From positions 1-64,000 of the forward strand of contig NIVC01000556.1 of assembly GCA_002269645.1 (NCBI GenBank): 64,000 nt of DNA. The letters are read 5' to 3'. Shown in pieces: positions 2,040-26,700 of this stretch. The position numbers and the translations under genes are program-made. Within the stretch, counting starts at the first letter, position 1. The number at the start of each line of letters is the position of its first letter. This stretch comes from Macrostomum lignano. Taxonomy: Eukaryota. The notes under the pieces are model-generated. The model was not told where the DNA came from and ran no database searches. It saw only the letters and a program-made list of their open reading frames with translations.

Positions 2040-3886
2040 CTTTTCACTCTACTGAGTACTATTAACTATATACCATTCACTGCACATTAAATTACACTTA
2101 GCTAACTTTATTTTTCATTCTAGGCTAGGCCTATTGTTCATTCTATTGTTAATTTGTTAACAAATATCTTAAACCCCAAGGAAGACAACCTTTTATACAT
2201 TATACGAGTAAGTCAATGACAATGAGCAATTTTAAAATATAAAAAAAGATGCAAAATTTATAGGCCTACTCAAGTAGAATTTGCTATGCCTGTGCCTATA
2301 TCTAAAAGGCGGAACCCCTTTTTCTCTAAGCAGAAAACATTAAATTTAGGTCTTGCTCAAATTTTTGGTCACTGTCCAAGACAGGGTCTGGTCTGGGCTT
2401 GAGTTTTGGGAACTTGATCCTGCTCCTTGGCAAAAACTTGTTCCGCGGCACCTAAGCCTATATATCCTATTTCTATAATCTTTATTTAATTACCAATTGG
2501 TTTAGACATTGCATCTTAGGCCTAGGCCCTACCCTATTATCTAGAGGCTAAAGCTAAGATTCCATCCCCAAACTAGTAATGTAGGCCTACGTAAAAATTT
2601 AGTATATATATTATATATATAAGTTATGTTGATTTTCTAGAACTAGAATCCATATGACTTTTAAAGTTTAAACTTGTTCTTTATACCTAATTTTTTCAAT
2701 TCATCTTTTTTTGTTTTGACTTACTTAGGCCTAGGCCTACTGCATTAGCTATTTACTATTTATTAATTAGATCTTTAAAATTGATTACAATTTCAAAAAA
2801 TTGTCTTGATTTCTTACTTTTGTTTAAGGCCCTAATTAAAACTGCTTTAGGCCTACCAATCTTAAACAAAAATAGATAGGCCTAATAAATTTATTAAATT
2901 AGTGACCTTTGGCTTTTAGGAGTTTTTTTCAATTATTAATATTAATAGAAATTATTGATAGATTCAATATTTGTGACAAGTTTACAAATGCTATAGTAAT
3001 TATATAGGGATAGGCCTAATTAATATTTAATACTACCCAATACAAGATAATTTAAATATGGATAAGACAGTTTTGATTTTTATATGTAGAGATATCATAA
3101 ATACATATTAGGCCTATGTATATTGTTAGTACAGATTGTTATTATTATACATATTATTATGTAGATATAGCAGATAGGTATATATAGCAGATATAGCAGA
3201 TAGGTATAACGCGGATATGAATTTATGAATTGCTGTTTAAGCGTCACCTTAGCCGGTATCCACCACGTGACATGTCGCATCAGTCGTGCATGGTGTGCGC
3301 GCGCGAGCATGATGTGAAATAATACAAAAATATTCAATTTAAATAATTTACCGAAGCTTAATAGTTAAAAAAGTGCAAAAAATATTATTGCTGCGTAAAA
3401 AAACGAAATCTAACGTTTTTCGTTACAAATTTTATTATAATTAAAAATACTTTCTTATTTTTTAAAGATCATAGTGATATAAACGCTAAAATATTGCCTT
3501 TAATTGTTATAAAAACCGCAAGTAAGGAAAATTTCTGAAAGAAACATGAACTATAAATCTCAAACTTAAAAAGTAAAATGTACAGCGTAAGGCAATTGAA
3601 CATAAGTGCTGATAAGTATAAGGGTATAAAATGCAAGTACTAAAAAAGGAAAATAAAGTTGAAACTGTTTCTACTTAACAGGTATTATACCCATAAAATT
3701 ATTCTAATAGTATCAAAGGGACGAAGCTAGTTTAACACTCAACGTCAACGATTTTGATATTTGAAGGCCTGCTCTTTTTAATTCTACCATCTATACATGT
3801 GCATGTTGTGAGTCGTGACGAATATTTGATCTGACATAAGATTTCACGTGCTGACGGGCTGCTACATGTATGCAAATTAGTGAGCT

Positions 3887-4484
3887 GGTGACCGGACATT
3901 TTCGTCATCAGGCATTTCATCAACTGCATGCATGGCATTTCGTCAACCGGCAAATTTCGTCAACGCGGCATTAATTTGGTCAACTCAGCAAATTTTAAAT
4001 TTTAGCTGATTATTATAGCTGCACCAGCCGGAGAATGTGAGAAGTGGTACGGCAGCGATGTCTTAAAACGTGTAAACTTCTTGGAAGTAAATTTTTTGTA
4101 GAAACGTTTGTGGTCCTCAATTATTGTGTCGCGCGCCTTGGGGTTGCATCGTGCAGCTGAACAATGCCTCGCAGGCTTTGGCGAGCTCCAAAATTCCCCT
4201 GTTTGCTGAAAGAGTGTCAATGACAGACATTTCCCTTTAAATATTAAATAAGTGATGTGCAGCTAGGAGGGTGCACTACTAAGTTGAGCGAGAGATAACT
4301 AATTAAAATTTAACATGTATAGGTTTATTTTAGTCATTCATGAGTGCAGATGAACGGCTAACAGTTAGGCTAGCATGACGGACGAATAATTTTGGCTTTG
4401 TCCAAACCAATGTCTGGTTGACGAATGTCCTGTTGACGAAATGCCATGTGACGAATGCCCGGTTAGACGAAATGTCCTTGAACC
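3887..4484. mobile_element. Probable non-autonomous DNA transposon with inverted subterminal repeats
   Basis: Left end has GGACATTTTCGTC plus several TTTCGTCAAC repeats. Right end has several GACGAA(A)TG repeats ending GACGAAATGTCCTTGAACC, i.e. the inverted orientation. No clear TSD. Confidence 0.5.
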
Positions 4485-4856
4485 AAAGAGCGCGAACACG
4501 TTCGTAGAACCAATTGATTGTGATCGATGACGAACTGGCCGATTATTCGATTACATGTATTTGTACCTTTTCTCAAACATGGAGGTACTAGTATAATAAT
4601 CACATGCCCGTACAACAATCCGACGACGTCGGCCGACGTCGCAGCACCGACCTCTGTCTGACGTCGTACGATGTCTATGTAGCATTACGTGTTTCCTATT
4701 GATCGGACGTCGGACCGACGTTGAAGTCGTAGTCGTTCATCAGCACGTCAGTCACATGTGTGTCTTCATCAACTCTGACTTTGTTGGCTAGGTTGGTCAC
4801 TGGCCTTCACCCCAGACGAGCTTCTCTGGATCTTCAACGGGGCATCGCCAGGATTT

Positions 4857-5235
4857 TTAAACTTGGAGAGCGAGTGTTACCTTCGTTTTTCTGTATGCTT
4901 GAACTGAAGGATAGCAAGCTTCGTGGGTTAATTCGGTTCGTTTGACAACGTGATATTCTTCTGATTTGTACAGTCGGATCGCGTCCATCCATTTGGCCGA
5001 TATAACTGTCTCCACCTGGCGGTAGAATAGTTAAAGTTCCATTGGATTCAGTTTGCCAATTGTTGCAAGTCTCGAATCAAATCAAATCAAATCCTTCTTA
5101 CCTCAAAAATATTTGGTAGGGTTTGTCTCCAACGCTCCCGTTCTCGTGCATCTTAAGGAAGAGCAATTATCGTTGTTCGGCTTCTTCTGAGTTATAGTTT
5201 GATCTGCAGTTGAAGACGCTGCACTTTCTCGACAT
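4857..5235 (-). pseudogene. Internally deleted P-element/THAP9-like transposase remnant
   Basis: From the ATG at 5235: MSRKCSVFNCRSNYNSEE..(fs)..IALP*DARERERWRQTLPNIFE|GTAAGA, a THAP zinc-finger start plus a donor site. This abuts NNWQTESNGTLTILPPGG..(fs)..AKWMDAIRLYKSEEYHVVKRTELTHEACYP...KVTLALQV, the P-transposase core. Confidence 0.75.
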
Positions 5236-5873
5236 TTTTCACAGTCGCACAAGAGTTGAGAGCTTTTTATTTGCCCTCACACCTCTTTAGACTGAAGAGT
5301 TGCAGTTGGAACAGCCATAGAACACTGCTTTTAAACGAGCCCCCAACTTTTTACACCATGCATGATTTAGCTTGTTTCGCGTCCCGGTAGTTTAAGTTGT
5401 CCCTGACGCAGGCACTCATTTTAGCGCCGAAGTCGCTATATTTTGGCGTCCTAAAGAAAAATCATGGATTACCACAACGACTCACAAGGTGGGGTGGGGA
5501 AAAACTCTTTTCAATATAATGTTACTTCTCGATTACTTAATCTGTACTCTAAAACTCGTTAATATATATTTTTTTCTAGCCATTTTTTTAATTTGAAACT
5601 TAATTATTGGAAATAGATAACAAACAAGGTATTTAATACAACATTTTTTAATTGAATTAATTCTCAAATAAACAATTTAATGATGAACAAATTTTAAACG
5701 TAAATTTATTGTTATTATTAGTATTGATTAGGAATCAAACAACTTGTTAACATCGGTTAGTTAGGAAATTTTAAAACTATAGAACAATCGACGAATTTAG
5801 AAAGGTTTAAATTACTGGCCGCGCTTAAAACAACGGTTATTTGAATAGCTCTGAATCTATATTAGAGATCAAA

Positions 5874-7583
5874 TCACTTATAGTAGACAATGTCCCAGTG
5901 GTTGCTCTCCAGAGCGTAAACATTTCCTCGGCCATCTGTGTACAGCTCTGCTCCGCCTGGGCGTTTACCACTATACCGGAAGTTGGCCTGGATGTAGCTG
6001 CTTATGCACGAATTTAGAGCGATGTCCAGCTTGTACCCGTTGTAGTGACTGTACTTGCCGCTTGCGTGCCCCTGCTCAGCGGGTTTGGGATATGCTGGAC
6101 TTACATGTACAAGTAGAGTCCGTTCGTAACAGGTAGCATCCCTTCTAACAGTTATCATACCTATCTAACAGTTATCATACCTATCTAACAGGTAGCAACA
6201 CCATCTAACAGGTAGCATCTCTATCTAGCAGGTAGCATCCCTATCTAACAGTTAGCATCCCTATCTAACAGGTAGCAACACTAACAGGTAGCAACACTAT
6301 CTAACAGGTAGCAACACTATCTAACAGGTAGCAACACTATCTAACAGGTAGCAACACTATCTAACAGGTAGTATCCCTATCTAACAGGTAGCAACCCTAT
6401 CTAACAGGTAGCAACCGTGTCTAACAGGCAGCAACCCAATGTAACAGGTAGCATCCCTATCTAACAAGTAGAATCCCTATCTAACAGATAGTATCCCTAT
6501 CTAACAGGTAGCAACACTATCTAACAGGTATCATCAGTTGTCACAGCCTGACCTTTTCTGTACCTCCCGTGATAACAACGCTCTGACAGCCGCACGCCTT
6601 CTTGAAAGCGACAATATCGATCACAGTGTTGCAGCGCACCTGCTCCAGCGAGGTGCAGCCAACGTCACGACAGCCGATGCGACCAGTGCTGGACCTGATC
6701 CCGATCCCGGACACTGAGCACATTGCCCAGGCCGCTTTGTGGCTCAGTTTAGTTCCAGGTGTGCAGTCCGGTGCGGTGTGAAGTGCGGTGCCGATCAGCG
6801 ACGATTTCATAGTGCGCGGTTGCACCAGGTTGATCAGGGCGAGGCTGGTTCGATCTCCTCTGAAGACGTCGAAGCTTTTACCTGCGAATTGGGAAAATAG
6901 CACTCAAATTAATTTTCCTCGTTCCTAAGCGTTTTTAAAATTCTAATTGTACGTTACTGTTAAATGTTCCGAAGGGATACGCTACCTGCTAGATAGGTTT
7001 GCTACCTGTTAGATAAAGATGCTACCTGTTAGATAGGGATGCTACATGTTAGATAGAGATGCTGCCTGTTAGATAGAGATGCTACCTGTTAGATAGGGAT
7101 GCTGCTGCAGTTAGATAGTGTTGCTACATGTTAGATAGGGATGCTGCCTCTTAGAAAGGGATGCTGCCTGTTAGATAGGGTGGCTACCTGTTAGATAGGG
7201 TTGCTAGCTGTTGGATAAGGTTGCTACCTATTAGATAGGGTTGCTACGTGTTAGATAGGGTTTCTACCTGTTGGATTGTGTTGCTAACTGTTAGATAGGG
7301 GTGCTACCTGTTAGATAGGGTTGCTACCTGTTAGATAGGGATGCTACCTGTTAGATAGGGATGCTGCCTGTTAGATAGGGATGCTGCCTCTTAGATAGGG
7401 ATGCTGCCTGTTAGATAGGGTTGCTACCTGTTAGATAGGGATGCTACCTGTTAGATAGGGATTCAGTCTGTTAAATAAACACTTACCAATAAAAGTGGAG
7501 TGTACAACAGCCTTGGAGTCTGCAGCGGCAGTGAAACACAGCACTCCCAAAAGCAGACCGAAGGCTGAATTAGCAACAATCAT
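5874..7583 (-). CDS. Secreted 207-aa Hedgehog/DD-peptidase (M15/LAS)-like putative zinc hydrolase; exons 7583-7487, 6881-6553, 6071-5874
   Basis: Exon 1 is a signal peptide, MIVANSAFGLLLGVLCFTAAADSK..., ending ATTG|GTAAGT (phase 1). Exon 2 runs from TTTTCCCAATTCGCAG|GT to GAAAAG|GTCAGG (phase 0). Exon 3 runs GAGCAG|GGGCAC...YYK*. The 624 nt splice in frame with no stops. Motifs: CTSLEQ, ITGGTEKGHASGKYSHYNGYKLDI, YALESNHWDIVY. Confidence 0.85.
6126..6535 (+). repeat. 20-bp minisatellite (CTATCTAACAGGTAGCAAC/ATCC) in intron 2 of the secreted peptidase-like gene
   Basis: About 20 tandem degenerate units are visible. Confidence 0.95.
6973..7461 (-). repeat. Same 20-bp minisatellite in inverted orientation (TAGATAGGGATGCTACCTGT) in intron 1
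   Basis: The unit is the reverse complement of the 6126-6535 unit. Confidence 0.95.
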
Positions 7584-7863
7584 AATGTCGAATGCAAGCA
7601 GTCGCAGGTACCCAGTGCAGATTGCTCACTAAGCAATTGCAGTTTTCAGCAATTTTCAGTGTCTACGAGTATATAAACAGTTGATATGCAGCAACATCAC
7701 GAGGTTTTAATAATTTGTCTAATCTGCTGTTGCAGATCTCTTTAATTTATTTAGCATTACCCCTACTAGTACACTGCAGCTTCGGAAATTGATAAGCTTA
7801 AATGAGGTGCTATTTTTAAATTCACGTCCTTATAAATGCTAAGATTAAATATTGTACAGATCA

Positions 7864-8098
7864 GTGGTTGTATCCTAGTGGCTAAGAGCGTCGGACTCAC
7901 GACTTGAAGGTCGGTAATTCGATTCTTGACCCACTCGAAACAACTTGTGTCCTTGAGCAATACACTTAACTCTGCATTGCTTCAGTTCACCCAGCTGTAA
8001 AATGGGTGCCAGCATTAGCTGGGGTAATTGAGGGTGTGTAGCGACGCCCCAGTCCTTGGACTGAACAGCCGTACGCAGCCTTCAGATGCGCCGCGCAA
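7864..8098 (+). mobile_element. tRNA-derived SINE, copy 1
   Basis: tRNA-like head with an A box (TAGTGGCTAAGAGCG) and a decayed B box (GGTAATTCGATTC). Body GTGTCCTTGAGCAATACACTTAACTCTGCATTGCTTCAGTTCACCCAGCTGTAAAATGGGTGCCAGC. A near-identical inverted copy lies at 60336-60566. Confidence 0.8.
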
Positions 8099-8542
8099 TA
8101 GCTGCGGCTGAGCTGTCGGTTGCACATCTGGCCCAATTCAGGAAGGTCTAAACAATTATTTTTATTTATTAAATTAGATAAAATATTATAAAATGTTTTG
8201 ACAATGTTTTTATTCCTACTCGTAAGTAGCAAACCATGAATAGAAAGCACATGCATCAAACACGGCATTTCCAAATAGCCCAAACAAGTTTTACGCCTTT
8301 TTCAATAGATCAGAATGTGACAGCTGAGGATTGTCTTAACTACTAAGATGATGTAAAATCCAAGTTTCACAGCGTTTAATGAATCGATTAAATGATGGGC
8401 ACCTGAGAATCCATTGTGTAAGCTTCTTGTTCAGGTTATATATCAAGCATGCAAAACAACAAGACGAACGTTTTTGATAGCTGTAAGCTGAGTGATAGCT
8501 CGTCAAAAAGAACTGATTTTAAATCCTGTTATTAACTAATTC

Positions 8543-8731
<189 letters not shown>

Positions 8732-9128
8732 GCTCGGTGACTCACACGACAGCGGACAGACACGACAACACAAGGAGGGCAGGCAGCCTGAGTGACTGTG
8801 GCTGCGTGGGCAGTGCAGATATTGTATTTATCAGTGTAGTAACCCCGGTTCCCATGCGGCCAGCCAAAGGAATGAACGAAGCCGCAGCCCATGCAGTTAT
8901 CGCGGCTCCGTTCATGGTTTTGTAAGTCGGAATCGGCCGTCGCTTATCAATTCACTTTGACAGAAAGGAATAAATCGCTGCAAGATAAAACCAGTCCACG
9001 CGCTATATTGTATGAAGCCTTTGCTCTTCTAGTCGGTTAGAAATTTTACAGCTAGCTATCCAGTAGGTTTGGTCAGGTATAGTGCGTATAGTTCTATTGA
9101 AACAACAGTAGATCCTTATTGACTATAG

Positions 9129-9518
9129 ATGGCTTTGAATATTGAACTATTGCTAGCTCTGCTTCTAGTAGCGAGCGGCTGCAACCGCTTAGCCAGCAGT
9201 TCGCCTGTTGCCGGGACGACCAACGGAGACGAAGACTACCTGGAGGAGTTGGTCCGACGCCAGTTCTCGCTTAGTCCGGGTTTCCCAGCCATCGGCAAGC
9301 GGTCAGACTCGGCCGCTGATTCGGCCAAGCCGGCAGAGCCACCGCATAGCGCATCGTCAGCTCCAGCCGACTGCGCCAGCAAGCAGGAGTTCCAGCAGCT
9401 CAGGCGCACCGTGGCGGCCATCTATTTGAAGATGCTGGAGGCCAATCTTGTTGATAGTCGACGAACTCGTCTGCAACGCCAGCTGATGATGCTACTCCAG
9501 CAGAAGCAAAAGCGTTGA
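9129..9518 (+). CDS. Neuropeptide precursor (129 aa); predicted pQFSLSPGFPAI-amide, GnRH/AKH-superfamily-like
   Basis: Hydrophobic signal peptide (MALNIELLLALLLVASGC), acidic spacer, then RR|QFSLSPGFPAI|G-KR (peptide at 9261-9293). N-terminal Q implies pyroGlu and the Gly is an amide donor. GC-rich coding island in AT-rich flanks. Confidence 0.85.
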   Translation: MALNIELLLALLLVASGCNRLASSSPVAGTTNGDEDYLEELVRRQFSLSPGFPAIGKRSDSAADSAKPAEPPHSASSAPADCASKQEFQQLRRTVAAIYLKMLEANLVDSRRTRLQRQLMMLLQQKQKR

Positions 9519-11046
9519 TTTGAAAACCGTTTCTTAAAGTTGCGTAATAATTTAAACTATTTAAACTACCATTTTTAACAAACTGTCAATTCACTGTTTG
9601 TTCTTTTTTGCTTGAATTGACAGTCAGTTTGATAAAATCATCAATAAGCTATAAACTGTTTTTGTTATACTAATGAAAAATGACTATCTATTTAAAATAC
9701 CATTTTTAACAAACTGTCAATTATCTGGTTGTTATTTTTTGTTCAAATGAACAGTTAGTTTTAAAAAATGATCAATAAGCTATAAACTGTTTTTGTACTA
9801 CTAATCGAAAATGACTAACGCAATCAATATGTTATAGATAAAGTTAATTTTTATTTAAATTAGTTATGCAATAAAAATATTTTGTTGCTTGAATATTTCT
9901 TGCTTGATTTGCCAATTTAAAAAAACCTACTTTGCTTTGTTTCTGTGGGTTTTCAAATAAGTGTGAATTTGTTTGTTATAATCTGTCTGCTCGTGTTTTT
10001 AAACAGCTTGCTTATCGTCGTGTGTTACATAAAAGCAGCTGTTAATGAAACACAAATATAGCACACGAAGTTCTGTTGTCATTAATTTTAATAATAAAAA
10101 AATTTAATATGAATTCCATAAATTTTACCTTATTGTAATAGTTTTTAATTTAATATTTAACTATTTAAAATGAAGTAGATTTACGCCGCGTCACTATACC
10201 GGTAAAGCCGTTTTTTCGTTAAAATCATCTTTTCCATTTCAAAGAACTGAAAAGAGTTTCTGGAAATAATTTTAATTAAACGTTCTGATAAAATACTGAA
10301 TACCATTTTCATAATTTTTATGGGCTTCGGAGTTCTCTGTTTATTCTGAAGTAACTTGGAGTTCACATCGGGAATTATGTGAAAACTATGTGAATGAAAA
10401 GATCTCACAGAATGGAAGTCAGCGCGTGATTAAAAACCGATCTTTTTCTGGCTCTCTGCAGTCTCGTGAGCTGCTGATGAAGCAGAATAAATCGTGATTT
10501 CGGGGCCTACACCTGGCAAGGAATTTAATCCACATATATGTATAAGAATTTGAATAAGAACTGGATCTTTACTACGATTGCAATTAGTGAGTGGGGAAGA
10601 AGCTGGCTGAGAGGATCAGTTGATGAGGCGCAGCACGAATCGCTCAAGATTTCCTGCTGGGAACATTAGAATTTCCTGCAATTTCGCACTCTTGGTGCGT
10701 AGCGTACGTGTAGAAGCAGAAAAAATGGAAAAAAGAATCTGAGGGCGATCGGCTGTTTTATTCGTCCTTCTGCTATACTCGCTGGATAATGTTGCTAGGA
10801 TAGATTTTCATGGGTCCGTGCTTGAAACCAAACTTAAGATAGCGTCAGCTATTCGATCGCTAAGGTCAAGGAGGCCTCCCTTAATTAGTAAAACCCGGTA
10901 CCCCGGCTCATTAATTGCTGTTCTGTGCCGTTCATCTTTATAGCTATCAGTTACAAACGCTTAAATTTCATCAGCGTCACTCTTTGACAGCAATTGTCAA
11001 GCATACACACGAACACACGAAACATTAAGGAGGCTTTTGCTGAAGT

Positions 11047-13030
11047 GAGGTTTTCCCGCAAGAGGTTTTCCCGCAAGAGGTTTTCCCGACAGGAGGTTTC
11101 CCCGACAGGAGGTTTCCCCGACAGGAGGTTTCCCCGACAGGAGGTTTCCCCGACAGGAGGTTTCCCCGACAGGAGGTTTCCCCGACAGGAGGTTTCCCCG
11201 GCAGGAGGTTTTCTCTGAAAAGGTTTTCCCACAAGAGTTTTTCCCACAAGAGTTTTTCCCACAAGAGGTTTTCCCGCAAGAGGTTTTCCCACAAGAGGTT
11301 TTCCCACAAGAGTTTTTCCCGCAAGAGGTTTTCCCGCAAGAGGTTTTCCCACAAGAGTTTTTCCCGCAAGAGGTTTTCCCACAAGAGGTTTTCCCACAAG
11401 AGTTTTTCCCGCAAGAGGTTTTCCCGCAAGAGGTTTTCCCACAAGAGTTTTTCCCGCAAGAGGTTTTCCCGCAAGAGGTTTTCCCACAAGAGTTTTTCCC
11501 GCAAGAGGTTTTCCCGCAAGAGGTTTTCCCGCAAGAGGTTTTCCCACAAGAGTTTTTCCCGCAAGAGGTTTTCCCGACAGGAGGTTTTCCCGACAGGAGG
11601 TTTCCCCGACAGGAGGTTTCCCCGACAGGAGGTTTCCCCGACAGGAGGTTTCCCCGACAGGAGGTTTCCCCGACAGGAGGTTTCCCCGACAGGAGGTTTC
11701 CCCGACAGGAGGTTTCCCCGACAGGAGGTTTCCCCGACAGGAGGTTTCCCCGACAGGAGGTTTCCCCGGCAGGAGGTTTTCTCTGAAAAGGTTTTCCCAC
11801 AAGAGTTTTTCCCACAAGAGTTTTTCCCACAAGAGGTTTTCCCGCAAGAGGTTTTCCCACAAGAGTTTTTCCCACAGGAGATTTACCGACAAGAGGTTTT
11901 CCCGCAGGAGATTTACCGACAAGAGGTTTTCCCACAAGAGTTTTTCCCACAAGAGGTTTTCCCGCAAGAGGTTTTCCCGACAGGAGGTTTCCCCGACAGG
12001 AGGTTTCCCCGACAGGAGGTTTCCCCGACAGGAGGTTTCCCCGACAGGAGGTTTCCACGACAGGAGGTTTCCACGACAGGAGGTTTCCCCGACAGGAGGT
12101 TTCCACGACAGGAGGTTTCCACGACAGGAGGTTTCCCCGACAGGAGGTTTCCACGACAGGAGGTTTCCACGACAGGAGGTTTCCCCGACAGGAGGTTTCC
12201 ACGACAGGAGGTTTCCACGACAGGAGGTTTCCCCGGCAGGAGGTTTTCTCTGAAAAGGTTTTCCCACAAGAGTTTTTCCCACAAGAGTTTTTCCCACAAG
12301 AGTTTTTCCCACAAGAGTTTTTCCCGCAAGAGGTTTTCCCACAAGAGGTTTTCCCGCAAGAGGTTTTCCCGCAAGAGGTTTTCCCGCAAGAGGTTTTCCC
12401 ACAAGAGGTTTTCCCGCAAGAGGTTTTCCCGCAAGAGGTTTTCCCACAAGAGTTTTTCCCACAAGAGGTTTTCCCGCAAGAGGTTTTCCCGCAAGAGGTT
12501 TTCCCGCAAGAGGTTTTCCCGCAAGAGGTTTTCCCGCAAGAGGTTTTCCCGCAAGAGGTTTTCCCGCAAGAGGTTTTCCCGCAAGAGGTTTTCCCGCAAG
12601 AGGTTTTCCCACAAGAGGTTTTCCCGCAAGAGGTTTTCCCGCAAGAGGTTTTCCCGCAAGAGGTTTTCCCGCAAGAGGTTTTCCCACAAGAGGTTTTCCC
12701 ACAAGAGTTTTTCCCACAAGAGTTTTTCCCACAAGAGTTTTTCCCACAAGAGTTTTTCCCACAGGAGATTTACCGACAAGAGGTTTTCCCGCAGGAGATT
12801 TACCGACAAGAGGTTTTCCCAGTGCAGATTTACCGACAAGAGGTTTTCCCAGTGCAGATTTACCAACAAGAGGTTTTCCCAGTGCAGATTTACCGACAAG
12901 AGGTTTTCCCACAGGAGGCTTCCCCACAAGAGGTTTTCCCATAGAAGGTTTCCCCGCTGGAGGTTCTTCCACAGAAGGTTTTCCTACAGGAGGTTTTCCC
13001 GCAAGGGTATTTCCGCAGGAGGTTTTCCGC
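11047..13030. repeat. Mixed 15/16-bp minisatellite (GAGGTTTTCCCRCAA; GGAGGTTTCCCCGACA) with higher-order blocks
   Basis: About 2 kb of tandem units. The landmark TTCTCTGAAA recurs at 11211, 11779 and 12246. Units degenerate at the right edge. Confidence 0.97.
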
Positions 13031-13599
13031 CGGTTTGCACTGTCCTGTTGATCTTGCAAACTTCGACGAATAGCTCATATAGACCCGGGTTTGACGGGCT
13101 CCTGAGCTCTAAATTGATTATAAATTTTTCAAATGAGATTTCTTATTTTTAATAACCACTATATAGAAGAAGTAAAATTAAAAAAGTGAATTGAATTTCC
13201 AGTTCGAGCACGGGTTTAGCTTTTCGACAGGCTATTGTTAATCAGCATGATGTTCCCAACCGATCGTGACTGATTGATTCAACTTGGCCAATCGTTTTTT
13301 TTATTAAAATTTGACATTTAGCCCAAACTTAGTGCAACCGTGATCAGAGCTTTGTCCTGCCTTCATCAGAGAGTTTTTCTAAAGCAAAATTAAACAATAA
13401 GCTATTCTTTTGTGGCGCTAAATAATTGCAGAAACAATTTTATTTAGCTTAGAAAAAACGCTTTGCATTCTTTGTTCAGCACGCACGAAGCTGAGTTCAC
13501 TTCCTATTCTTTGCACTCTCATTGTAATTAGGCTTGACTTGAAGCTTAATAAAATACTAATGAGACAGCTCTCTCCTGTCTCGCCCCAAATGTGTTCTC

Positions 13600-14390
13600 T
13601 TATCTTTCTCTAATCTCAGTCTAATCTCTCTCTTATCTCAATCTTATTTCTCTCTTATCTCAATCTAATCTCTCTTATCTCGATCTAACCTCTCTCTCAT
13701 CTCAATCTAATCTCTCTCTGATCCCAGTCTAATGTCTCTCTGATCCAAGTCTAATCTTTCGCTAATTTAAATCTAATCTCTCTGATCTCAATCTATTCTC
13801 TCTGATCCAAATCCATTATCTCTCTTATCTCAATCTAATCTCTCTCTCTGATCCCAGTCTAATATCTCCGATCTCAATCTAATCTCTCTGATCTCCCTCA
13901 GTCTAGTCTCTCTCTAATTCCAGTCCAATCTCTCTGATCGCACTCTAATCTCTCTCTGATCTCACTCTAATCTCTCTCTGATCTCTCTCTGATCTCACTC
14001 TAATCTCTCTGATCTCACTCTAATCTCTCTGATCTCACTCTAATCTCTCTGATCTCACTCTAATCTCTCTGATCTCACTCTAATCTCTCTGATCTCACTC
14101 TAATCTCTCTGATCTCACTCTAATCTCTCTCATCTCAGCCTAGTCTCTCTCTAATTCCAGTCTAATCTCTCTTATCTCACTCTAATCTCTCTGATCTCAC
14201 CCTAATCTCTCTGATCTCAGTCTAGTCTCTCTCTGATCTGACTTTAATCTGTCTCTCTTTCTGATCTGAGCCTAATCTCTCTCTAATCCCAGTCTAATCT
14301 CAATCTAACCTCTCTCTGATCTTTTTCTGATTTGTCTTTGATCTCATTCTGATCTCTCTGATTTCACTCTCTCATTTATAAATCTCATAT
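13600..14390. repeat. Pyrimidine-rich ~20-bp minisatellite (TCTAATCTCTCTGATCTCAC)
   Basis: Perfect core at about 13990-14130 with degenerate flanks. Confidence 0.9.
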
Positions 14391-14942
14391 ATCTAATTTT
14401 ATGTTATCGTTTATACATTTCATAAAATTCTCCCTCAGCACAATTCATTATTACAGCCGCCTCCCCCATATTTTAACAAAAGCAAGCCGCAGCTCACAAA
14501 ATGTACATATTTTTGCTTGTGAAACCACACCAGACTCATGCGAAACGCAAACTATGATTTTATACAGCAGCCCTACTGTGTCCCATCTGTCAGACAGATT
14601 CGATTGAATGTTTAAAGCCGACGCGGAAAACAATCTGGTGCGCAGTTTCGCGTGTGTGTCTATTTAGCTAAGCAAGACTGAATTCCCGGCCGTCTGATTT
14701 GCTATGCATTTCTGCTTTTCTGTTCTGTTTTCCCGCTCTCTCTTTCGCTGGCTCACCTCACAAACTGCAGCTCTGGATTCATTTTTTATTCAGCTGCGCA
14801 AGGCGAGAAACAGCGCGTTGATACGTGTCGGATGTGACCTGAGATGACCCGAGCGCGTGTTTTGCCTCTAGGAGCGGCACCCTGCTTTTACTAAAAGCAG
14901 ATAATATCTGATTTCCAATGAGATGCTAAATTATGCTAATGC

Positions 14943-14994
14943 TACTACTAGTACTACTACTACTACTACTAGTACAGTACTACTACTAGTACAG

Positions 14995-15072
<78 letters not shown>

Positions 15073-15095
15073 TAATACTACTACTACTACTACTG

Positions 15096-15134
<39 letters not shown>

Positions 15135-15164
15135 TACGAATACTACTACTACTACTAATACTAC

Positions 15165-15195
<31 letters not shown>

Positions 15196-15196
15196 G

Positions 15197-15229
<33 letters not shown>

Positions 15230-15234
15230 ATACT
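14943..15234. repeat. (TAC)n microsatellite
   Basis: Trinucleotide run with few interruptions. Confidence 0.97.
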
Positions 15235-15535
15235 CAATAATCAATATTGCTACTACGTCACTGCCATTTAAAGATATTTTTGACGGTTTTTTAGCGTGTA
15301 AATCCTCAGCTGCTACCCCACACTCTCGACTGGGTGTCTGAAATGATTTGATAGTCAACAGTTCTTTACTAAAAAGTGGATAAAAAATCCCAGAAATCGG
15401 ATTTAAGTAGAAAAAATTGTGGAATTCAAGCTTGATTGACAGTCTTAGAAAGTTTCACTTTAGAAATCAGGGAGCGTTTGTACTTTCGTTTAGTTCAATT
15501 CATACAGGCGGATCTTTGCAAATAGAGACACCGCT

Positions 15536-16925
15536 CAAATACAGACATCTGGGTTCAAATACAGACATCTGGGTTCAAATACAGACATCTGGGTTCAAAT
15601 ACAGACATCTGGGTTCAAATACAGACATCTGGGTTCAAATACAGACATCTTGGTTCAAATACAGACATCTTGGTTCAAATACAGACATCTTGGTTCAAAT
15701 ACAGACATCTGGGTTCAAATACAGACATCTGGGTTCAAATACAGACATCTTGGTTCAAATACAGACATCTGGGTTCAAATACAGACATCTTTGTTCAAAT
15801 ACAGACATCTGGGTTCAAACACAGATATCTGGGTTCAAATACAGACATCTTTGTTTAAATACAGACATCTGGGTTCAAATACAGACATTTGGGTTCAAAC
15901 ACAGACATCTTGGTTCAAATACAGACATATGGGTTCAAATACAGACATCTGGGTTCAAATACAGACATCTGGGTTCAAATACAGACATCTGGGTTCAAAC
16001 ACAGACATCTGGGTTCAAATACAGACATCTGGGTTCAAATACAGACATCTGGGTTCAAATACAGACATCTGGGTTCAAACACAGACATCTGGGTTCAAAT
16101 ACAGACATCTGGGTTCAAATACAGACATCTGGGTTCAAATACAGACATCTGGGTTCAAATACAGACATCTGGGTTCAAATACAGACATCTGGGTTCAAAT
16201 ACAGACATCTTTGTTTAAATACAGACATCTTTGTTTAAATACAGACATCTGGGTTCAAATACAGACATCTGGGTTCAAATACAGACATCTGGGTTCAAAT
16301 ACAGACATCTGGGTTCAAATACAGACATCTTTGTTCAAATACAGACATCTGGGTTCAAACACAGACATCTGGGTTCAAATACAGACATCTGGGTTCAAAT
16401 ACAGACATCTTTGTTTAAATACAGACATCTGGGTTCAAATACAGACATTTGGGTTCAAACACAGATATCTTGGTTCAAATACAGACATCTGGGTTCAAAT
16501 ACAGACATCTGGGTTCAAATACAGACATCTTTGTTCAAATACAGACATCTGGGTTCAAATACAGACATCTGGGTTCAAATACAGACATCTGGGTTCAAAT
16601 ACAGACATCTGGGTTCAAATACAGACATCTGGGTTCAAATACAGACATCTGGGTTCAAATACAGACATCTTTGTTTAAATACAGACATCTTTGTTTAAAT
16701 ACAGACATCTGGGTTCAAATACAGACATCTGGGTTCAAATACAGACATCTGGGTTCAAATACAGACATCTGGGTTCAAATACAGACATCTTTGTTTAAAT
16801 ACAGACATCTGGGTTCAAATACAGACATCTGGGTTCAAATACAGACATCTGGGTTTAAATACAGACATCTGGGTTCAAATACAGACATCTGGGTTCAAAT
16901 ACAGACATCTGGGTTTAAATACAGA
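15536..16925. repeat. 20-bp minisatellite (CAAATACAGACATCTGGGTT), about 70 copies
   Basis: Strict 20-bp periodicity; it aligns in columns in the 60-nt lines. Confidence 0.98.
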
Positions 16926-17319
16926 AATACTCGAACACGGTGACCAGTCTATTGTTCCTCTCACTATAAGGCAATAATCAAAGGATGATATAAAAGAAAT
17001 CCCACAGACATTGCACAAGCAGCAAGGCTGCCACGCCCATAAAATTTATAACCTGGATTTGATGACGCACAGTTTTGTTATTAGCTGAGGGTTATTTTTG
17101 TGCCAACCCGTGAACCGGGTCTTCTGCACGCTCGCAGAAAGGGATGTTTGGCCAATGGGGTAGTTTGTACTTTTACTGTCAGATATGCGAAGCAATACAA
17201 ATGCCACAGCTGGCTTTTGGGGATAATTAATTAGACAGAAGAATGTTGCAGAAATAATCTCCAATGCAGGTGTTCTTGAATAGGGAAATATATTTTAATT
17301 AATAGCTCAATGCCGTCTC

Positions 17320-18200
17320 ATTGGTATCTCATTCATATATCATTGGTATTTCATTGGTATCTCATTGGTATCTCATTCATATATCATTGGTATCTCATTG
17401 GTATCTCATTGGTATCTCATGCATATATCATTGGTATCTCATTGGTATTTCATTGACATCTCATTGATATCTCATCGGTATCCCATTGGTATCTCATTGA
17501 CATCTCATTAGTATCTCATTGATATCTCATTGATATCTCATTGACATCTCATTAGTATCTCATCGGTATCCCATTGGTATCTCATTGACATCTCATTAGT
17601 ATCTCATTGATATCTCATTGATATCTCATTGGTATCTCATTGGTATCTCATTGGTATCTCATGCATATATCATTGGTATTTCATTGGTATCTCATTGGTA
17701 TCTCATTCATATATCATTGGTATTTCATTGGTATCTCATTGGTATCTCATGCATATATCATTGGTATTTCATTGGTATCTCATTGGTATCTTATTCATAT
17801 ATCATTGGTATTTCATTGGTATCTCATTGGTATCTCATTCATATATCATTGGTATTTCATTGGTATCTCATTGGTATCTCATGCATATATCATTGGTATT
17901 TCATTGGTATCTCATTGGTATCTCATGCATATATCATTGGTATTTCATTGGTATCTCATTGGTATCTCATTCATATATCATTGGTATTTCATTGGTATCT
18001 CGTTGGTATTTCATTCATATATCATTGGTATTTCATTGGTATCTCATTGGTATCTCATTCATATATCATTGGTATTTCATTGACATCTCATTGATATCTC
18101 ATTAGTATCTCATTGATATCTCATTGATATCTCATTGGTATCTCATTCATATACCATTGGTATCTCATTGGTATCTCATTGATATCTCATTGGTGTTTCA
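17320..18200. repeat. 11-bp minisatellite (TCATTGGTATC) with higher-order variants
   Basis: Tandem TCATTGGTATC/TCATTGGTATT/TCATTCATATA units. Confidence 0.95.
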
Positions 18201-18942
18201 TTGACAACTCATGGGTGTCTCATTGATTTAATGACTAACTCAAAACAGAATGATGGCCTCAGTTTAGGTTGGAGACAAAATCCTTTGTTTCTAAGTTGTT
18301 TTATTGTGAATATCTATAATTGCTCTGCCCACATATTGTGGACACGCAATCAAAGCAGACCCTCAGGCAAAACCTGGAAAACACCGACCAATGCCTGGTT
18401 TCTATCTGACAGGCAGTCAAAAGATAAAACGCGATTAAAGCAAACAGGAAATTGAAGCCTTGAGGCTCAGACGAATGACCTGAATACGGGATAAAAGAGG
18501 TAGCGGTGATTCTAGAGAATAATTATTATCTGCAAATGATTGAACAACAACAACCGTGTGTACTGAAATGAAAGAAAGCCTCAGATGAAATGAAAAAATA
18601 AGGAAGGGCAAGACCAACTCGAACAGTTTAGATGAAAAACAAAGTCGTAATTCAGCGCACACTTGTACTTTAACAAATAGTTAAATCTTTTTTTCAGATT
18701 GACAAAAATAGATTATTGTTGCGGAAATAAAACTCATAAGAATAGTCATGCGAATGTTGCCAGGCAGTTGGGCTTACTTGAGAGACAAGAATGTCATGAC
18801 TGGGACACGGCCGCATTGCAGGGAAATCCTCACTTCCCCTTTCTGACAACTGACAATACAAGCTGGCAGGTAGAAGGGAAAGCATTTGACATTTTGACCA
18901 GGAAGAAAATTTTTTTTGAGACCAATAAACTGAGTTACCGCT

Positions 18943-19914
<972 letters not shown>

Positions 19915-20241: not shown

Positions 20242-22963
20242 TCAAGCCCTCCCTCCACCAGGACCCTCGCCGCGGCCGCCGCCTGCGGCCCTGTTAGCGA
20301 ACGCCTTACGGACGTAGTGCTGAAACACCCTGCTGAGGCTCCAGTATAGAAAGGGGCAGAGGGCGCTGTGCAGATAGATGAGCGCCTGGCTGTATGGATA
20401 AACAGCTAGCAGCGGGCTGCTCAAGTCCGACGGACTCTTCAGTATGAAGTCCTGCAGCAGGATGATCAGATCTTTCGGAAACCAGCAGCAGAAGAACAGC
20501 GTCACGAGCACGACAACCGTTTTCACTGTGCGTTTCTGCAGCTTCCTAGTTTGATAGGCCGGCGACCTGGACGATGCCAGAGTGTTGAGCTGTCGGCTGC
20601 CACTCAGACGGCTGCCACCGGCCATCAGGCGAGCCGTGGCCATCACGGACGTCTGATTGGTGGTCAGCGGCGGCTCGACTCCCGGCAGTTCGACGGCTTC
20701 AGCTCCCTCCTCCGCCACGGCCGCTTCCCGTTGTTGGCTTCTTGTTGTGGGATTCTTAGTCAGCCTGGTGAACTGCCGGGAGATGAAGCGGGCAGTGAAG
20801 CCGTAGGAGAAAGTCAGCACGATGCAGGGAGACAGGAACAGAATGAGCAGCAAGTAGGCTGAGTAGGCCTTCTGTCCGGCCGAGTTGCTGCGGTCTTCCG
20901 AGCACACGAAGTAGACTCGATCTGTGGCATTCTTGCCTACTCCAGGAATCGGCACTTCCGCCAATTTGAAAGCAAACAGAGCCGGAAGTGAGACTACGAG
21001 AGCGCTTAGCCAGGTGCCGGCTACCAGGATGCGAAGTCCTCGAGTCGAAGTCTGAGTTGGCGGAATCATTAGGGCGCTTTGGCGAGCGCGAAGGATGGCG
21101 ATGGAGGCCAGGGAGAAACTGTTGACGCTGAGAGCCAAGCCTGAGGGGGGGTGAGGATTGGCTTCTGAAGTGGCACATCATCGGGTCTAGATCTATTATA
21201 AGTGGCACATCATCGGGTCTAGATCTATTATAAGTGGCACATCATCGGGTCTAGATCTATTATAAGTGGCACATCATCGGGTCTAGATCTAATAGAAGTG
21301 GCACCTCATCGGGTCTAGATCTACTATAAGTGGCACATCATCGGGTCTAGATCTAATAGAAGTGGCACATCATCGGATCTAGATCTAATAGAAGTGGCAC
21401 ATCATCGGGTCTAGATCTAATAGAAGTGGCACATCATCGGGTCTAGATCTAATAGAAGTGGCACATCATCGGGTCTAGATCTAATATGAATGGCACATCA
21501 TCGGGTCTAGATCTAATATGAATGGCACATCATCGGGTCTAGATCTAATATGAATGGCACATCATCGGGTCTATATCTAATAGAAGTGGCACATCATCGG
21601 GTCTAGATCTAATAGAAGTGGCACATCATCGGGTCTAGATCTAATAGAAGTGGCACATCATCGGGTCTAGATCTAATATAAGTGGCACATCATCGGGTCT
21701 AAATCTAATAAGTGGTCCCTTACTGAGCCTGGCTCAACCTGCAAAAACAATTCAAGCAAGATTAACGCGCGAAGGACCAAGAAACCGACCTTGTTAAATA
21801 TTTAGCTGACTTCTCCGGTTCCAGATGGTTCAGTAGCAGTCAGGGTAAAATGAAAACTAATTACCTTAGGAGGCTGCTTTATTTGTCATGATGAAGACAG
21901 GTGTGAAAGTTTTTTTCTCTAGACAGTGTCTGACTAATGGCTCTGCAATTAATCATCTGTTGTCGCCCGGTAGATACTTTTAGCCAGATCCCATCTCACT
22001 TAAATCTTTTAGCATCTTAGACTCAACGTGAAAATGAGTTAGCTAAAATCTATAATGCAAAGCGAAGATTTGTGCTTTGCACTGAATATTCAGAAAATTG
22101 GACTATATACTCGTGGGTTTAAAAAATATGGGTTTTGACTTCTCAGCCTTGAAATCTCAGCAATTCCCTCAGTAAGCCTTTAAATCTTACCAATGCCCCC
22201 AGTAAGCCTTTAAATCTTACCAATGCCCCCAGTAAGCCTTTAAATCTCAGCAATTCCCCCAGTAAGCCTTGACATCTTAACAATTCCCCCAATGAATGTT
22301 TTCATGTTCTACGGCTCGTTCATGTTCTTTTGTTGTTTTGGAAATAATGCTTCTTTTGTTTCACTTTTTGGCCTTTACAGTGCATTCCAGTGCAGCGAAA
22401 CAATGCATATCGTACAAAAACATTATTAATTAAAAATAAACATTCGCAGGACATAACACCTTCGAAGACATCGTCCCGCAATCTGGCCTGACGGCAATTC
22501 TGCCCAGACCGCTGACTCCTGAGAACATGCAAGCCCGCCAATACTGTACGCAGTCACTCACTCATTCAACACGCTCACGCAAGGTGTACAGAGGTCCTTT
22601 TTTGAATTTCTAATTCAAGCCTCCCAGTCTACCTTCAATGAAGCTGACCAGCCGGCATCCTGCCAGACCGAAGCGCCAAGTCGTGTAGAACACTTTCACG
22701 GTAGACACTGGCAGGCAGGTACACGTGACCAGCAGGTTGGAGCCCGCCAAGCTCATCATGATGTACGATATGTGCCGTCGTAGTCCTCGATAGCGGAAGC
22801 TCAGAAACAGGAAGAAGCCGTTTCCGCATAGAGACAGCAGGGCAATGACAGAGTAGATGGACACCAGTGCGACATCGGATCCATTCAACACTCTACGGCC
22901 GTAGATTTGGTCGTGCAGCATGTCCATGAGCAGTTGCTGGGTGAAGTTCTGATCGGGCTCCAT
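20242..22963 (-). CDS. Rhodopsin-like (class A) peptide GPCR, CCK/orexin/QRFP-receptor-like, about 409 aa; exons 22963-22633 and 21140-20242
   Basis: Seven hydrophobic segments: TM1 GN, TM2 LAGSNLL, ECL1 WRFG..C, TM3 SLASIAILRA, TM4 W, TM6 FFCCWFP, TM7 HSALCPFLY. The phase-1 splice GAAG|GTAGAC...CCCCCTCAG|GCTTG joins LVSFIE-G-LALSVNS in frame. The start Met (MEPDQNFT) is inferred. Confidence 0.9.
21167..21712. repeat. 32-bp minisatellite (AAGTGGCACATCATCGGGTCTAGATCTAATAG) in the GPCR intron
   Basis: About 17 tandem copies ending about 25 nt from the splice acceptor. Confidence 0.95.
22170..22290. repeat. Short ~30-bp tandem repeat (AGTAAGCCTTTAAATCTTACCAATGCCCCC)
   Basis: About 4 copies. 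Related degenerate units occur at about 43250-43370. Confidence 0.7.

Positions 22964-25775: not shown

Positions 25776-26700
<925 letters not shown>

What the first reader, a model, noticed from the sequence alone, without database searches (positions are those of the whole stretch)
9129..9518. Candidate new GnRH/AKH-superfamily neuropeptide pQFSLSPGFPAI-amide with atypical precursor layout
Seen: signal peptide, acidic spacer (GDEDYLEELV), RR, QFSLSPGFPAI, GKR, then a C-terminal associated peptide with one Cys. Established knowledge: pyroGlu start, aromatic residue near position 2, S-P-G core and amidation typify the GnRH/AKH/ACP/corazonin family. As I recall, annelid members such as pQFSFSLPGKWGNamide begin similarly. 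Unusual points: the family-typical Trp is replaced (F at position 8), and the peptide does not directly follow the signal peptide. Family assignment is inference.
Basis: partly seen in the sequence, partly recalled or inferred. Interest (0 to 1): 0.7.

Follow-up and report, generated by a model that had tools for sequence, protein, structure and literature searches.

The report
Orphan flatworm neuropeptide precursor, AKH-like only superficially
A small transcribed gene of the flatworm Macrostomum lignano has the full layout of a neuropeptide precursor and should release one blocked 11-residue peptide (pQFSLSPGFPAI-amide), but placing that peptide in the GnRH/AKH hormone family rests on a weak resemblance and it fails most of the family's defining tests.

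Summary
Window 9129-9518(+) is an uninterrupted 129-aa ORF with a hydrophobic signal peptide, an acidic spacer, RR, QFSLSPGFPAI, GKR and a 71-aa C-terminal part containing one Cys. The window is the first 64 kb of Macrostomum lignano contig NIVC01000556.1. GenBank annotates the gene from RNA-seq-derived models, so it is transcribed, and it is a GC island (58% against 43% and 25% in the flanks). The dibasic-Gln...Gly-dibasic cassette is unlikely by chance (P = 0.002 in composition-preserving shuffles). Planarian mass spectrometry shows flatworms process such sites in this way.

Family membership is not established. The peptide aligns without gaps to AKH/RPCH (Q1, S5, P6, G7; L4 for F4, F8 for W8). 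It meets only 2 of 6 published AKH hallmarks and lacks Phe4 and Trp8, the residues essential for AKH receptor activation. It is not adjacent to the signal peptide, and it scores below nearly all true family members (shuffle P = 0.03-0.06 before multiple testing). No homologue was found among 1.84 billion cluster representatives. UniRef's "CRF domain" label for a paralogue is unsupported.

Verdict: a credible orphan neuropeptide precursor, with about 15-20% chance of being a divergent GnRH/AKH-type ligand.

The parts
9129..9518 (+). Complete single-exon CDS (129 codons plus TGA) of the prepropeptide. A copy of the M. lignano Mlig030574 gene group.
   Evidence: GC island. In-frame TAG at 9126.
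9129..9179 (+). Predicted signal peptide (residues 1 to about 17, MALNIELLLALLLVASG). Cleavage is possible after residues 15-18.
   Evidence: Hydropathy and the (-3,-1) rule. No SignalP run, so this is inference.
9180..9254 (+). Pro-region spacer (residues 18-42) with an acidic stretch GDEDYLEELV.
   Evidence: Read directly from the sequence.
9255..9260 (+). Dibasic cleavage site RR (residues 43-44).
   Evidence: Dibasic processing in flatworms is shown by MS in planarians.
9261..9293 (+). Predicted mature peptide QFSLSPGFPAI (residues 45-55), giving pGlu-FSLSPGFPA-Ile-NH2 with [M+H]+ 1145.599.
   Evidence: Motif shuffle P = 0.0019. Mass computed.
9294..9302 (+). Gly56 amidation donor plus the KR cleavage site (residues 56-58).
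   Evidence: Planarian peptides ending ...a.GKR were verified by MS.
9303..9515 (+). C-terminal associated peptide (residues 59-129). It has a Ser/Ala/Pro-rich linker, a single Cys82 and a basic Leu/Gln-rich stretch with internal RR sites at residues 92-93 and 111-112. It ends KQKR with no Gly, so no C-terminal amide is expected.
   Evidence: No CRF/ELH signal. All 5 differences between the copies fall here, 4 of them non-synonymous.
9557..9817 (+). 131-bp tandem duplication (2 copies, 86-87% alike), each copy with a 17-nt inverted repeat, in the 3' flank or UTR. The first AATAAA is at 9870.
   Evidence: A functional link to the gene is not shown.

Best explanation
This is a genuine, transcribed, single-exon gene of Macrostomum lignano encoding a 129-aa secretory prepropeptide.

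Inferred mechanism: the signal peptide is removed around residue 17. A prohormone convertase of the PC2 type cuts after RR44 and after KR58. A carboxypeptidase trims the basic residues. Peptidylglycine alpha-amidating monooxygenase uses Gly56 to amidate Ile55, and Gln45 cyclises to pyroglutamate. The single product is the uncharged, end-blocked 11-mer pQFSLSPGFPAI-NH2, which most likely signals through a peptide GPCR. The 71-aa tail is a non-conserved associated peptide.

On present evidence the peptide is best treated as a lineage-restricted orphan. It looks like AKH/RPCH in register, but its membership of the GnRH/AKH/corazonin superfamily is not demonstrated.

Shown: the ORF, its composition, the non-random motif, its transcript-based annotation and the absence of detectable homologues. 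Inferred: the cleavage, the modifications, secretion from neurons and action on a receptor.
For: The ORF and all motifs are present. The CDS is a GC island with GC3 of 65%. The motif arises with P = 0.0019 in composition-preserving shuffles. The gene is annotated on three assembly copies, and the GenBank annotation comes only from RNA-seq-based transcripts. M. lignano has a nervous-system PC2 homologue needed for development (PMC4490696). Planarian MS shows KR.pQSYLTGGIRY.KK, an internal pGlu peptide, and many ...a.GKR amides. No homologue was found among 5.8 billion clusters or 1.84 billion representatives apart from low-complexity hits. No match to the peptide string was found in the searched literature or in the 51 planarian prohormones.
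Against: There is no direct evidence of the processed peptide, of neuronal expression or of a receptor. No orthologue shows conservation of the peptide relative to its flanks. The three M. lignano copies are too similar to reveal constraint, because the flanks are about 99% identical too. The n-region of the signal peptide carries Glu and no basic residue, and no dedicated predictor was run. Two flatworm peptide catalogues (McVeigh 2009; Koziol 2016) could not be read, so an existing 'npp' name cannot be excluded.
Confidence: 0.58

Rival explanations
1. The peptide is a divergent GnRH-type (AKH/RPCH-like, 'proto-AKH') ligand of a macrostomid flatworm. It would have Leu4 and Phe8 in place of Phe4 and Trp8, would have moved to an internal position in the precursor, and would act on a GnRH/AKH-type receptor.
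For: It aligns without gaps and in register to GlomoAKH pQLTFSPGWa and to RPCH (the RPCH sequence was recalled from memory). Q1, S5, P6 and G7 are identical, and L4/F4 and F8/W8 are conservative. The position 1-8 score against an AKH panel beats 99.8% of shuffles, though that test was chosen post hoc. It shares QFS-S-PG with annelid pQFSFSLPGKWGNa. It is uncharged and blocked at both ends, has GKR, and is followed by an associated peptide with one Cys. It formally fits Li et al.'s loose 'proto-AKH' class: longer than 10 residues with 2 hallmarks. Polyclad flatworms have one GnRH-type and three corazonin-type receptors (PMC13551398). Ciona precursors show that internal GnRH copies can exist.
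Against: Only 2 of 6 AKH hallmarks are met. Phe4 and Trp8, whose replacement abolishes AKH/RPCH receptor activation, are both changed. A 25-27-residue spacer plus RR separates the peptide from the signal peptide, whereas Smed-grh-1 and oyster AKH follow the signal peptide directly. There is no intron in the CDS (for the family pattern). The score of 24 is below 30 of 31 true members. Gapped shuffle P is 0.026-0.058, uncorrected for the choice among dozens of families. Li et al. found no AKH or AKH receptor in eight platyhelminths, although M. lignano was not screened. The adjacent GPCR is NPFF/CCK/orexin-like, not GnRHR-like.
Confidence: 0.17
2. It is a small secreted protein of a non-neuronal tissue (gland, prostate or seminal fluid, epidermis). 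The dibasic and Gly motifs would be incidental and no amidated peptide would be made.
For: The gene has no homologues. The tail shows 4 non-synonymous to 1 synonymous differences between copies, as expected for a fast-evolving secreted protein. There are five dibasic sites in 129 aa, so some motifs are expected. No expression data could be obtained.
Against: The full RR-Q...G-KR cassette arises in only 0.19% of composition-matched shuffles. The released peptide has the typical size and end-blocking chemistry of bioactive peptides. The acidic spacer before a dibasic site is a common prohormone feature (established knowledge).
Confidence: 0.15
3. The precursor belongs to the CRF/DH44/egg-laying-hormone family, as UniRef's name for the paralogue suggests ('Corticotropin-releasing factor domain-containing protein'). 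The C-terminal helix-prone part would be the hormone and QFSLSPGFPAIamide a co-peptide.
For: There is the UniRef name. The tail is basic and Leu/Gln-rich, sits at the C-terminus of the precursor, and its ending ...RLQRQLMMLLQQKQKR is superficially like the ...LRQRLLEK-GKR ending of Aplysia ELH (recalled from memory).
Against: Pfam gives no hit even at E <= 10 for either copy or for the isolated tail. phmmer against PDB, which holds CRF and urocortins, gives nothing relevant. A CRF/urocortin/DH44/ELH profile built here scores -0.8 bits, and 65% of shuffles score as high. There is no C-terminal Gly for amidation and no N-terminal SLSIDxP-like motif. The tail carries 4 non-synonymous differences between copies.
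Confidence: 0.02
4. The ORF is not a functional protein-coding gene. It would be a chance ORF within a transcribed region, or a decaying duplicate.
For: It is lineage-restricted, lies in a repeat-rich region, and no conservation test was possible.
Against: A 390-nt ORF with GC3 of 65% sits in 25-43% GC surroundings. It is intact in all three copies with no frameshift or stop. Its secretory and processing architecture is coherent.
Confidence: 0.05

Closest known systems
AKH/RPCH octapeptides (e.g. Glossina AKH pQLTFSPGWamide; Pandalus RPCH pQLNFSPGWamide, the latter recalled from memory)
   Same: pGlu1, Ser5-Pro6-Gly7, a hydrophobic residue at 4 and an aromatic residue at 8 all line up in the same register. 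The peptide has no charged residues and an amidated C-terminus made from G-K/R-R. An associated peptide containing Cys follows.
   Different: Leu4 replaces Phe/Tyr and Phe8 replaces Trp, the two residues essential for receptor activation. It is 11 residues long with a -PAI-amide extension instead of W, WG or WGX-amide. It lies internally after a 25-27-residue spacer plus RR rather than directly after the signal peptide. The CDS has no intron.
Annelid 'proto-AKH-1' / Capitella GnRH-2, pQFSFSLPGKWGNamide (Li et al. 2016)
   Same: Both begin pQ-F-S-x-S, contain a P-G pair followed by an aromatic residue, exceed 10 residues and are amidated.
   Different: The alignment needs two gaps. The annelid peptide keeps Phe4 and the WGN-amide ending and follows the signal peptide. 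The alignment score is only 17.
Smed-grh-1 (planarian GnRH-like-1 prohormone; pQSYHFSNDWLPamide; Collins et al. 2010)
   Same: Same phylum, small precursor, Gln start, GKR amidation site and a downstream region containing Cys.
   Different: The planarian peptide has the lophotrochozoan GnRH/corazonin core Y-H-F-S-N-x-W and sits at, or 4 residues after, the signal peptide cleavage site. No sequence similarity to the M. lignano precursor was detected, and no shared 4-mers were found.
Planarian prohormones with internal pGlu or amidated peptides (e.g. 1020HH-2 KR.pQSYLTGGIRY.KK; NPP-3, NPP-4, MPL-1 ...a.GKR)
   Same: Same precursor logic: signal peptide, spacer, dibasic site, short peptide, then G plus a dibasic site. 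Processing is confirmed by MS in a flatworm.
   Different: The peptide sequences are unrelated. Most of those precursors are multi-copy, whereas this one carries a single peptide.

Membership tests
True AKH (Li et al. 2016 hallmarks) | Length of 8, 9 or 10 residues | tested here: not met
   The predicted peptide is 11 residues long. Hallmark list from PMC5024129.
True AKH (Li et al. 2016 hallmarks) | pGlu at position 1 | tested here: met
   Gln45 directly follows RR43-44. Cyclisation is inferred, not chemically shown.
True AKH (Li et al. 2016 hallmarks) | Aliphatic or aromatic residue at position 2 | tested here: met
   Phe at position 2.
True AKH (Li et al. 2016 hallmarks) | FS, FT or YS at positions 4-5 | tested here: not met
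   Leu-Ser at positions 4-5. Phe4 is essential for receptor activation.
True AKH (Li et al. 2016 hallmarks) | Trp at position 8 | tested here: not met
   Phe at position 8, and the whole precursor contains no Trp. Replacing Trp8 abolishes AKH/RPCH receptor activation.
True AKH (Li et al. 2016 hallmarks) | W-amide, WG-amide or WGX-amide C-terminus | tested here: not met
   The C-terminus is F-P-A-I-amide.
GnRH/AKH/corazonin superfamily precursor | The peptide immediately follows the signal peptide | tested here: not met
   A 25-27-residue spacer plus RR lies between the predicted signal peptide (cut after residues 15-18) and Gln45. Compare Smed-grh-1 and oyster AKH. Ciona multi-copy precursors are a known exception.
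GnRH/AKH/corazonin superfamily precursor | G-K/R-R amidation and cleavage site followed by an associated peptide, often with Cys | tested here: met
   GKR at residues 56-58 and a 71-aa tail with Cys82. This feature is common to many unrelated prohormones, so it discriminates little.
GnRH/AKH/corazonin superfamily precursor | Conserved intron within the coding region | tested here: not met
   The CDS is uninterrupted. Family pattern from Li et al. 2016. This is a weak criterion because introns can be lost.
GnRH/AKH/corazonin superfamily | Peptide similarity to recognised members comparable to that among members | tested here: not met
   The best score is 24 against at least 28 for 30 of 31 members in leave-one-out. 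Shuffle P is 0.026 for the full panel and 0.058 for the literature-only panel.
GnRH/AKH/corazonin superfamily | Activates a GnRH/AKH/corazonin-type GPCR, and such a receptor is present in the species | not testable with these tools
   The M. lignano receptor repertoire could not be searched. Polyclads have such receptors. Li et al. found none in 8 other flatworms. The neighbouring GPCR is NPFF/CCK/orexin-like.
Lophotrochozoan GnRH/corazonin-type (pQ-x-[YF]-H-[FY]-S-x-[GSD]-W...) | H-F-S core and Trp at position 9 | tested here: not met
   There is no His and no Trp. Scores against the octopus, Aplysia, Capitella and Smed-grh-1 peptides are at most 16.
CRF/DH44/ELH | Profile match to the 36-46-aa hormone, and a C-terminal Gly for amidation | tested here: not met
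   No Pfam hit. PDB search gives nothing relevant. The profile built here scores -0.8 bits and 65% of shuffles score as high. The protein ends KQKR without Gly.
Amidated neuropeptide prohormone (generic) | Signal peptide, dibasic-flanked peptide and a Gly amide donor | tested here: met
   Motif P = 0.0019.
Amidated neuropeptide prohormone (generic) | Mature peptide detected, and expression in neurons or endocrine cells | not testable with these tools
   No peptidomic or expression data for Mlig030574 were found. Transcription is implied by the RNA-seq-based annotation.

The most novel reading that the evidence does not exclude
pQFSLSPGFPAI-amide is the GnRH-type (AKH-like) ligand of an early-branching flatworm. 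It would be a Trp-less, Phe4-less family member released from an internal position of its precursor, acting on a GnRH-type receptor of the kind recently reported in polyclads. That would overturn the statement that platyhelminths lack AKH-like signalling, and it would show that the 'invariant' Phe4/Trp8 pharmacophore and the rule that the peptide abuts the signal peptide can both be lost.
Probability: 0.15. Interest if true: 0.6.

Novelty: new member of a known kind. Interest (0 to 1): 0.35.

Why it matters
M. lignano is a transgenic, RNAi-amenable flatworm model for regeneration and sexual allocation, and its neuropeptide inventory is poorly described in the literature available here. A cleanly predicted single-copy amidated pGlu peptide gives a concrete target: a known mass for peptidomics, a 390-nt probe, and a peptide cheap to synthesise for receptor deorphanisation. 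If it proved to be a GnRH/AKH-type ligand, it would bear on when AKH-like signalling arose in Spiralia and on how far the ligand pharmacophore can drift. If it is an orphan, it adds to the evidence that flatworm peptidergic systems contain many lineage-specific ligands. Either way it is an incremental finding rather than a conceptual one.

Tried and rejected
1. Homologue searches.
- The word-indexed search of 5.8 billion clusters with the whole protein found only the protein itself.
- The same search with a 40-aa peptide-centred query found no candidate sharing three 5-mers. It did not return the protein itself either, so its sensitivity is doubtful.
- Exhaustive phmmer against 1.84 billion representatives gave only self plus two hits in the Ser/Ala/Pro-rich or KQEF..LRR stretch. 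These are a 5838-aa protein with 34 matched stretches and a repeat protein, and I rejected both as low-complexity matches.

2. CRF lead from the UniRef name. Rejected after the Pfam, PDB and own-profile tests.

3. Selection analysis between the three M. lignano copies. It is uninformative. There are 5 differences, 4 of them non-synonymous, all after nt 218. However, the flanks are equally about 99% identical and the identity pattern is mosaic, so neither constraint nor relaxation can be inferred.

4. Looking for a canonical M. lignano GnRH-like gene with Smed-grh-1 as query. Only the planarian protein was returned, which is uninformative at this sensitivity.

5. Literature string searches.
- For the peptide and its sub-strings: none relevant.
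- For 4-mers in the 51 planarian prohormones: none.
- In the Taenia npp supplement: none.
- The polyclad neuropeptide table is not held as text.
- McVeigh 2009 and Koziol 2016 are not held.

6. Gene-ID search for expression data: nothing.

7. Neighbouring GPCR as a possible cognate GnRH-type receptor. Rejected because it is NPFF/CCK/orexin-like.

8. Structure prediction was not run. It would not discriminate between the hypotheses for a short, processed precursor.

Full report
**1. What is there**

Window 9129..9518(+) is an uninterrupted ATG-to-TGA ORF of 129 codons, with an in-frame TAG immediately upstream.
- a hydrophobic N-terminus, MALNIELLLALLLVASG(C), with mean Kyte-Doolittle hydropathy of 2.4-2.8 over residues 5-17 and (-3,-1)-compatible cleavage sites after residues 15-18;
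- a spacer ending in the acidic stretch GDEDYLEELV;
- RR (residues 43-44), QFSLSPGFPAI (45-55), Gly56 and Lys57-Arg58;
- a 71-residue tail with a single Cys (C82), further RR sites at 92-93 and 111-112, and the C-terminus KQKR.

**2. Where it comes from, and whether it is a gene**

An exact-sequence look-up places the protein on Macrostomum lignano assembly GCA_002269645.1, contig NIVC01000556.1. The window is the first 64 kb of that contig.

Two further copies, on contigs NIVC01000992 and NIVC01000617, encode a protein that differs at 4 residues. They are annotated BOX15_Mlig030574g2 and g3. The DV1 line that was sequenced carries duplicated chromosomes. The GenBank annotation was produced only from RNA-seq-derived, genome-guided transcripts (Wudarski et al. 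2017, PMC5730564). The three copies are therefore expected, and the annotation itself implies transcription.

The CDS is a compositional island, with GC 57.9% and GC3 64.6% against 43% upstream and 25% downstream. All three copies keep the frame intact. I conclude that it is a real protein-coding gene.

**3. Is the processing cassette more than chance?**

I shuffled residues 19-129 100,000 times. A [KR][KR]-Gln-x(3-18)-Gly-[KR][KR] cassette arose in 0.19% of shuffles, and in 1.9% without the Gln requirement.

Flatworms are known to process such sites as predicted. Planarian mass spectrometry recovered KR.pQSYLTGGIRY.KK, an internal pGlu peptide, and many amides cut from ...G-K-R sites (Collins et al. 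2010, Table S2). M. lignano has a PC2 homologue that is expressed in the nervous system and is essential for post-embryonic development (PMC4490696).

The predicted product is pGlu-FSLSPGFPA-Ile-NH2, with monoisotopic [M+H]+ 1145.599. Cleavage, cyclisation, amidation, neuronal release and receptor action are all inferences.

**4. Relatives**

No relative was found by any of the four searches:
- the word-indexed search of 5.8 billion clusters returned only the protein itself;
- a peptide-centred 40-mer found no candidate, although that search did not return self either, so its sensitivity is uncertain;
- exhaustive phmmer over 1.84 billion representatives gave self plus two hits confined to the low-complexity or coiled stretch of residues 50-95, which I reject as homologues;
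- Pfam found nothing.

The peptide string and its sub-strings do not occur in the searchable literature or among the 51 planarian prohormones.

The comparison between the three M. lignano copies gives no information on selection. There are five nucleotide differences, four of them non-synonymous, all in codons 73-123. The flanks are just as similar, and the identity pattern is mosaic: 99.95% to L002 up to about 8730, then 96%.

**5. The GnRH/AKH hypothesis, tested**

Li et al. 2016 (PMC5024129) define six AKH hallmarks. The candidate meets two, pGlu1 and an aromatic residue at position 2. It fails four: length, FS/FT/YS at positions 4-5, Trp8 and the W/WG/WGX-amide ending.

Phe4 and Trp8 are the most conserved residues, and their replacement abolishes activation of AKH/RPCH receptors (PMC5855764). 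The candidate has Leu4 and Phe8.

The precursor rule that the peptide abuts the signal peptide also fails. That rule holds for oyster AKH and for the planarian GnRH-like Smed-grh-1, pQSYHFSNDWLPamide. Here a 25-27-residue spacer plus RR intervenes. The CDS also lacks the intron common to the family, which is weak evidence.

I scored the peptide against a panel of 31 GnRH/AKH/corazonin/ACP peptides.
- The best hit is an ungapped, in-register match to RPCH/Glossina-AKH-type octapeptides. Q1, S5, P6 and G7 are identical, with L4/F4 and F8/W8 as conservative pairs. The score is 24.
- That score exceeds 97.4% of shuffles with the full panel and 94.2% with the literature-only panel.
- It is lower than the leave-one-out score of 30 of 31 true members, which score at least 28.
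- A post hoc position 1-8 test against AKH-type peptides gives P = 0.002, but it was chosen after seeing the alignment.
- None of these P values is corrected for the dozens of peptide families a reader could have matched.

The resemblance is therefore real but weak. The candidate formally fits only Li et al.'s descriptive 'proto-AKH' bin.

**6. Context that keeps the hypothesis alive**

Li et al. found no AKH or AKH receptor in eight flatworm genomes, but M. lignano was not among them. [quoted passage not shown] It also notes that freshwater and parasitic flatworms lost many conserved peptides (PMC13551398). M. lignano is a marine, early-branching flatworm and could therefore retain a GnRH-type receptor.

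I could not search its receptor repertoire. A search with Smed-grh-1 returned only the planarian protein, which is uninformative. I put the probability of true superfamily membership at about 0.15-0.2.

**7. The CRF lead**

UniRef names the paralogue 'Corticotropin-releasing factor domain-containing protein'. The evidence is against this:
- Pfam finds nothing even at E <= 10 for either copy or for the isolated tail;
- phmmer against PDB sequences, which include CRF and urocortins, finds nothing relevant;
- a CRF/urocortin/sauvagine/DH/ELH profile that I built from recalled textbook sequences scores -0.8 bits, and 65% of shuffles do as well;
- the tail ends without a Gly amide donor.

I reject this reading.

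**8. Best explanation and rivals**

- Most likely (about 0.58): a lineage-restricted orphan neuropeptide or peptide-hormone precursor that yields one end-blocked, uncharged 11-mer.
- Divergent GnRH/AKH-type ligand (about 0.17).
- Non-neuronal secreted protein with an incidental motif (about 0.15).
- Non-functional ORF (about 0.05).
- CRF/ELH-type precursor (about 0.02).

**9. Novelty and interest**

This is a new member of a known kind, the amidated pGlu neuropeptide precursors. I found no description of it in the literature I could search. Two flatworm catalogues (McVeigh 2009; Koziol 2016) could not be read, so a prior 'npp' designation cannot be ruled out.

Interest is moderate to low (0.35). 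The candidate is clean and testable in a tractable model, but it is not surprising unless the AKH link is proven.

Noticed in passing
window 20242-23047 (-): A two-exon rhodopsin-type peptide GPCR gene lies 11 kb downstream of the peptide gene. Exon 1 (about 22610-23047) covers TM1-3 and exon 2 (20242-21138) covers TM3/4-7. Its best PDB sequence matches are NPFF2, CCK-A, orexin, bombesin-3 and QRFP receptors, and GnRH receptor is not among the top 60. Its intron contains a 32-bp x 17 tandem array (21168-21710). The usual DRY motif position reads ILR.
   Followed up: partly
window 9557-9817: A 131-bp tandem duplication (2 copies, 86-87% identical) begins 39 nt after the stop codon. Each copy carries a 17-nt inverted repeat (AACAAACTGTCAATTCA / TGAATTGACAGTCAGTT). 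It is the most variable stretch between the three genomic copies. The first AATAAA is at 9870.
   Followed up: partly
L002 (NIVC01000992) and L003 (NIVC01000617), gene at 6001-6390 in each: Two further copies of the gene have identical CDS. They differ from the window copy at 5 nt (H73Q, A83V, T113N, L123R and one silent change). Window 3212-8730 is 99.95% identical to L002, but 8528-11797 is only 96% identical, which suggests mosaic haplotypes, gene conversion or assembly chimerism in the duplicated DV1 genome.
   Followed up: partly
UniRef100_A0A267G360 (P0002): The public name 'Corticotropin-releasing factor domain-containing protein' for the paralogue is not reproducible with Pfam, PDB or a CRF/DH44/ELH profile. 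It looks like an over-permissive automatic annotation.
   Followed up: yes
window 6127-7462, 8543-8730, 11047-13028, 13598-16925, 17317-18225, 18943-19914, 24346-26718, 54394-64000: There are more than 25 tandem-repeat arrays, for example 15 bp x 130, 20 bp x 70, (ATAG)n x 243 and (TAGA)n x 240. They produce most of the long 'ORFs' in the window (up to 702 aa). These ORFs are spurious.
   Followed up: partly
window 28000-40000: A GC-rich block (52-57% GC) holds retroelement fragments. RNase H/RVT_3 ORFs lie at 31024-32043(+) and 34211-35365(-), and reverse-transcriptase-like ORFs at 32335-33222(-) and 36158-36739(-). At least two non-LTR-type insertions appear to be nested or adjacent.
   Followed up: partly
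window 43645-44301 (+): A TAF9 (TFIID 31-kDa subunit) homologue (Pfam PF02291, E = 1.8e-39) is present as a single ORF.
   Followed up: partly
window 45836-50466 (+): Two adjoining long ORFs (1234 aa and 309 aa, overlapping by 4 nt in different frames) have no Pfam domain. They are probably one large gene with a short intron or a frameshift. Function unknown.
   Followed up: no
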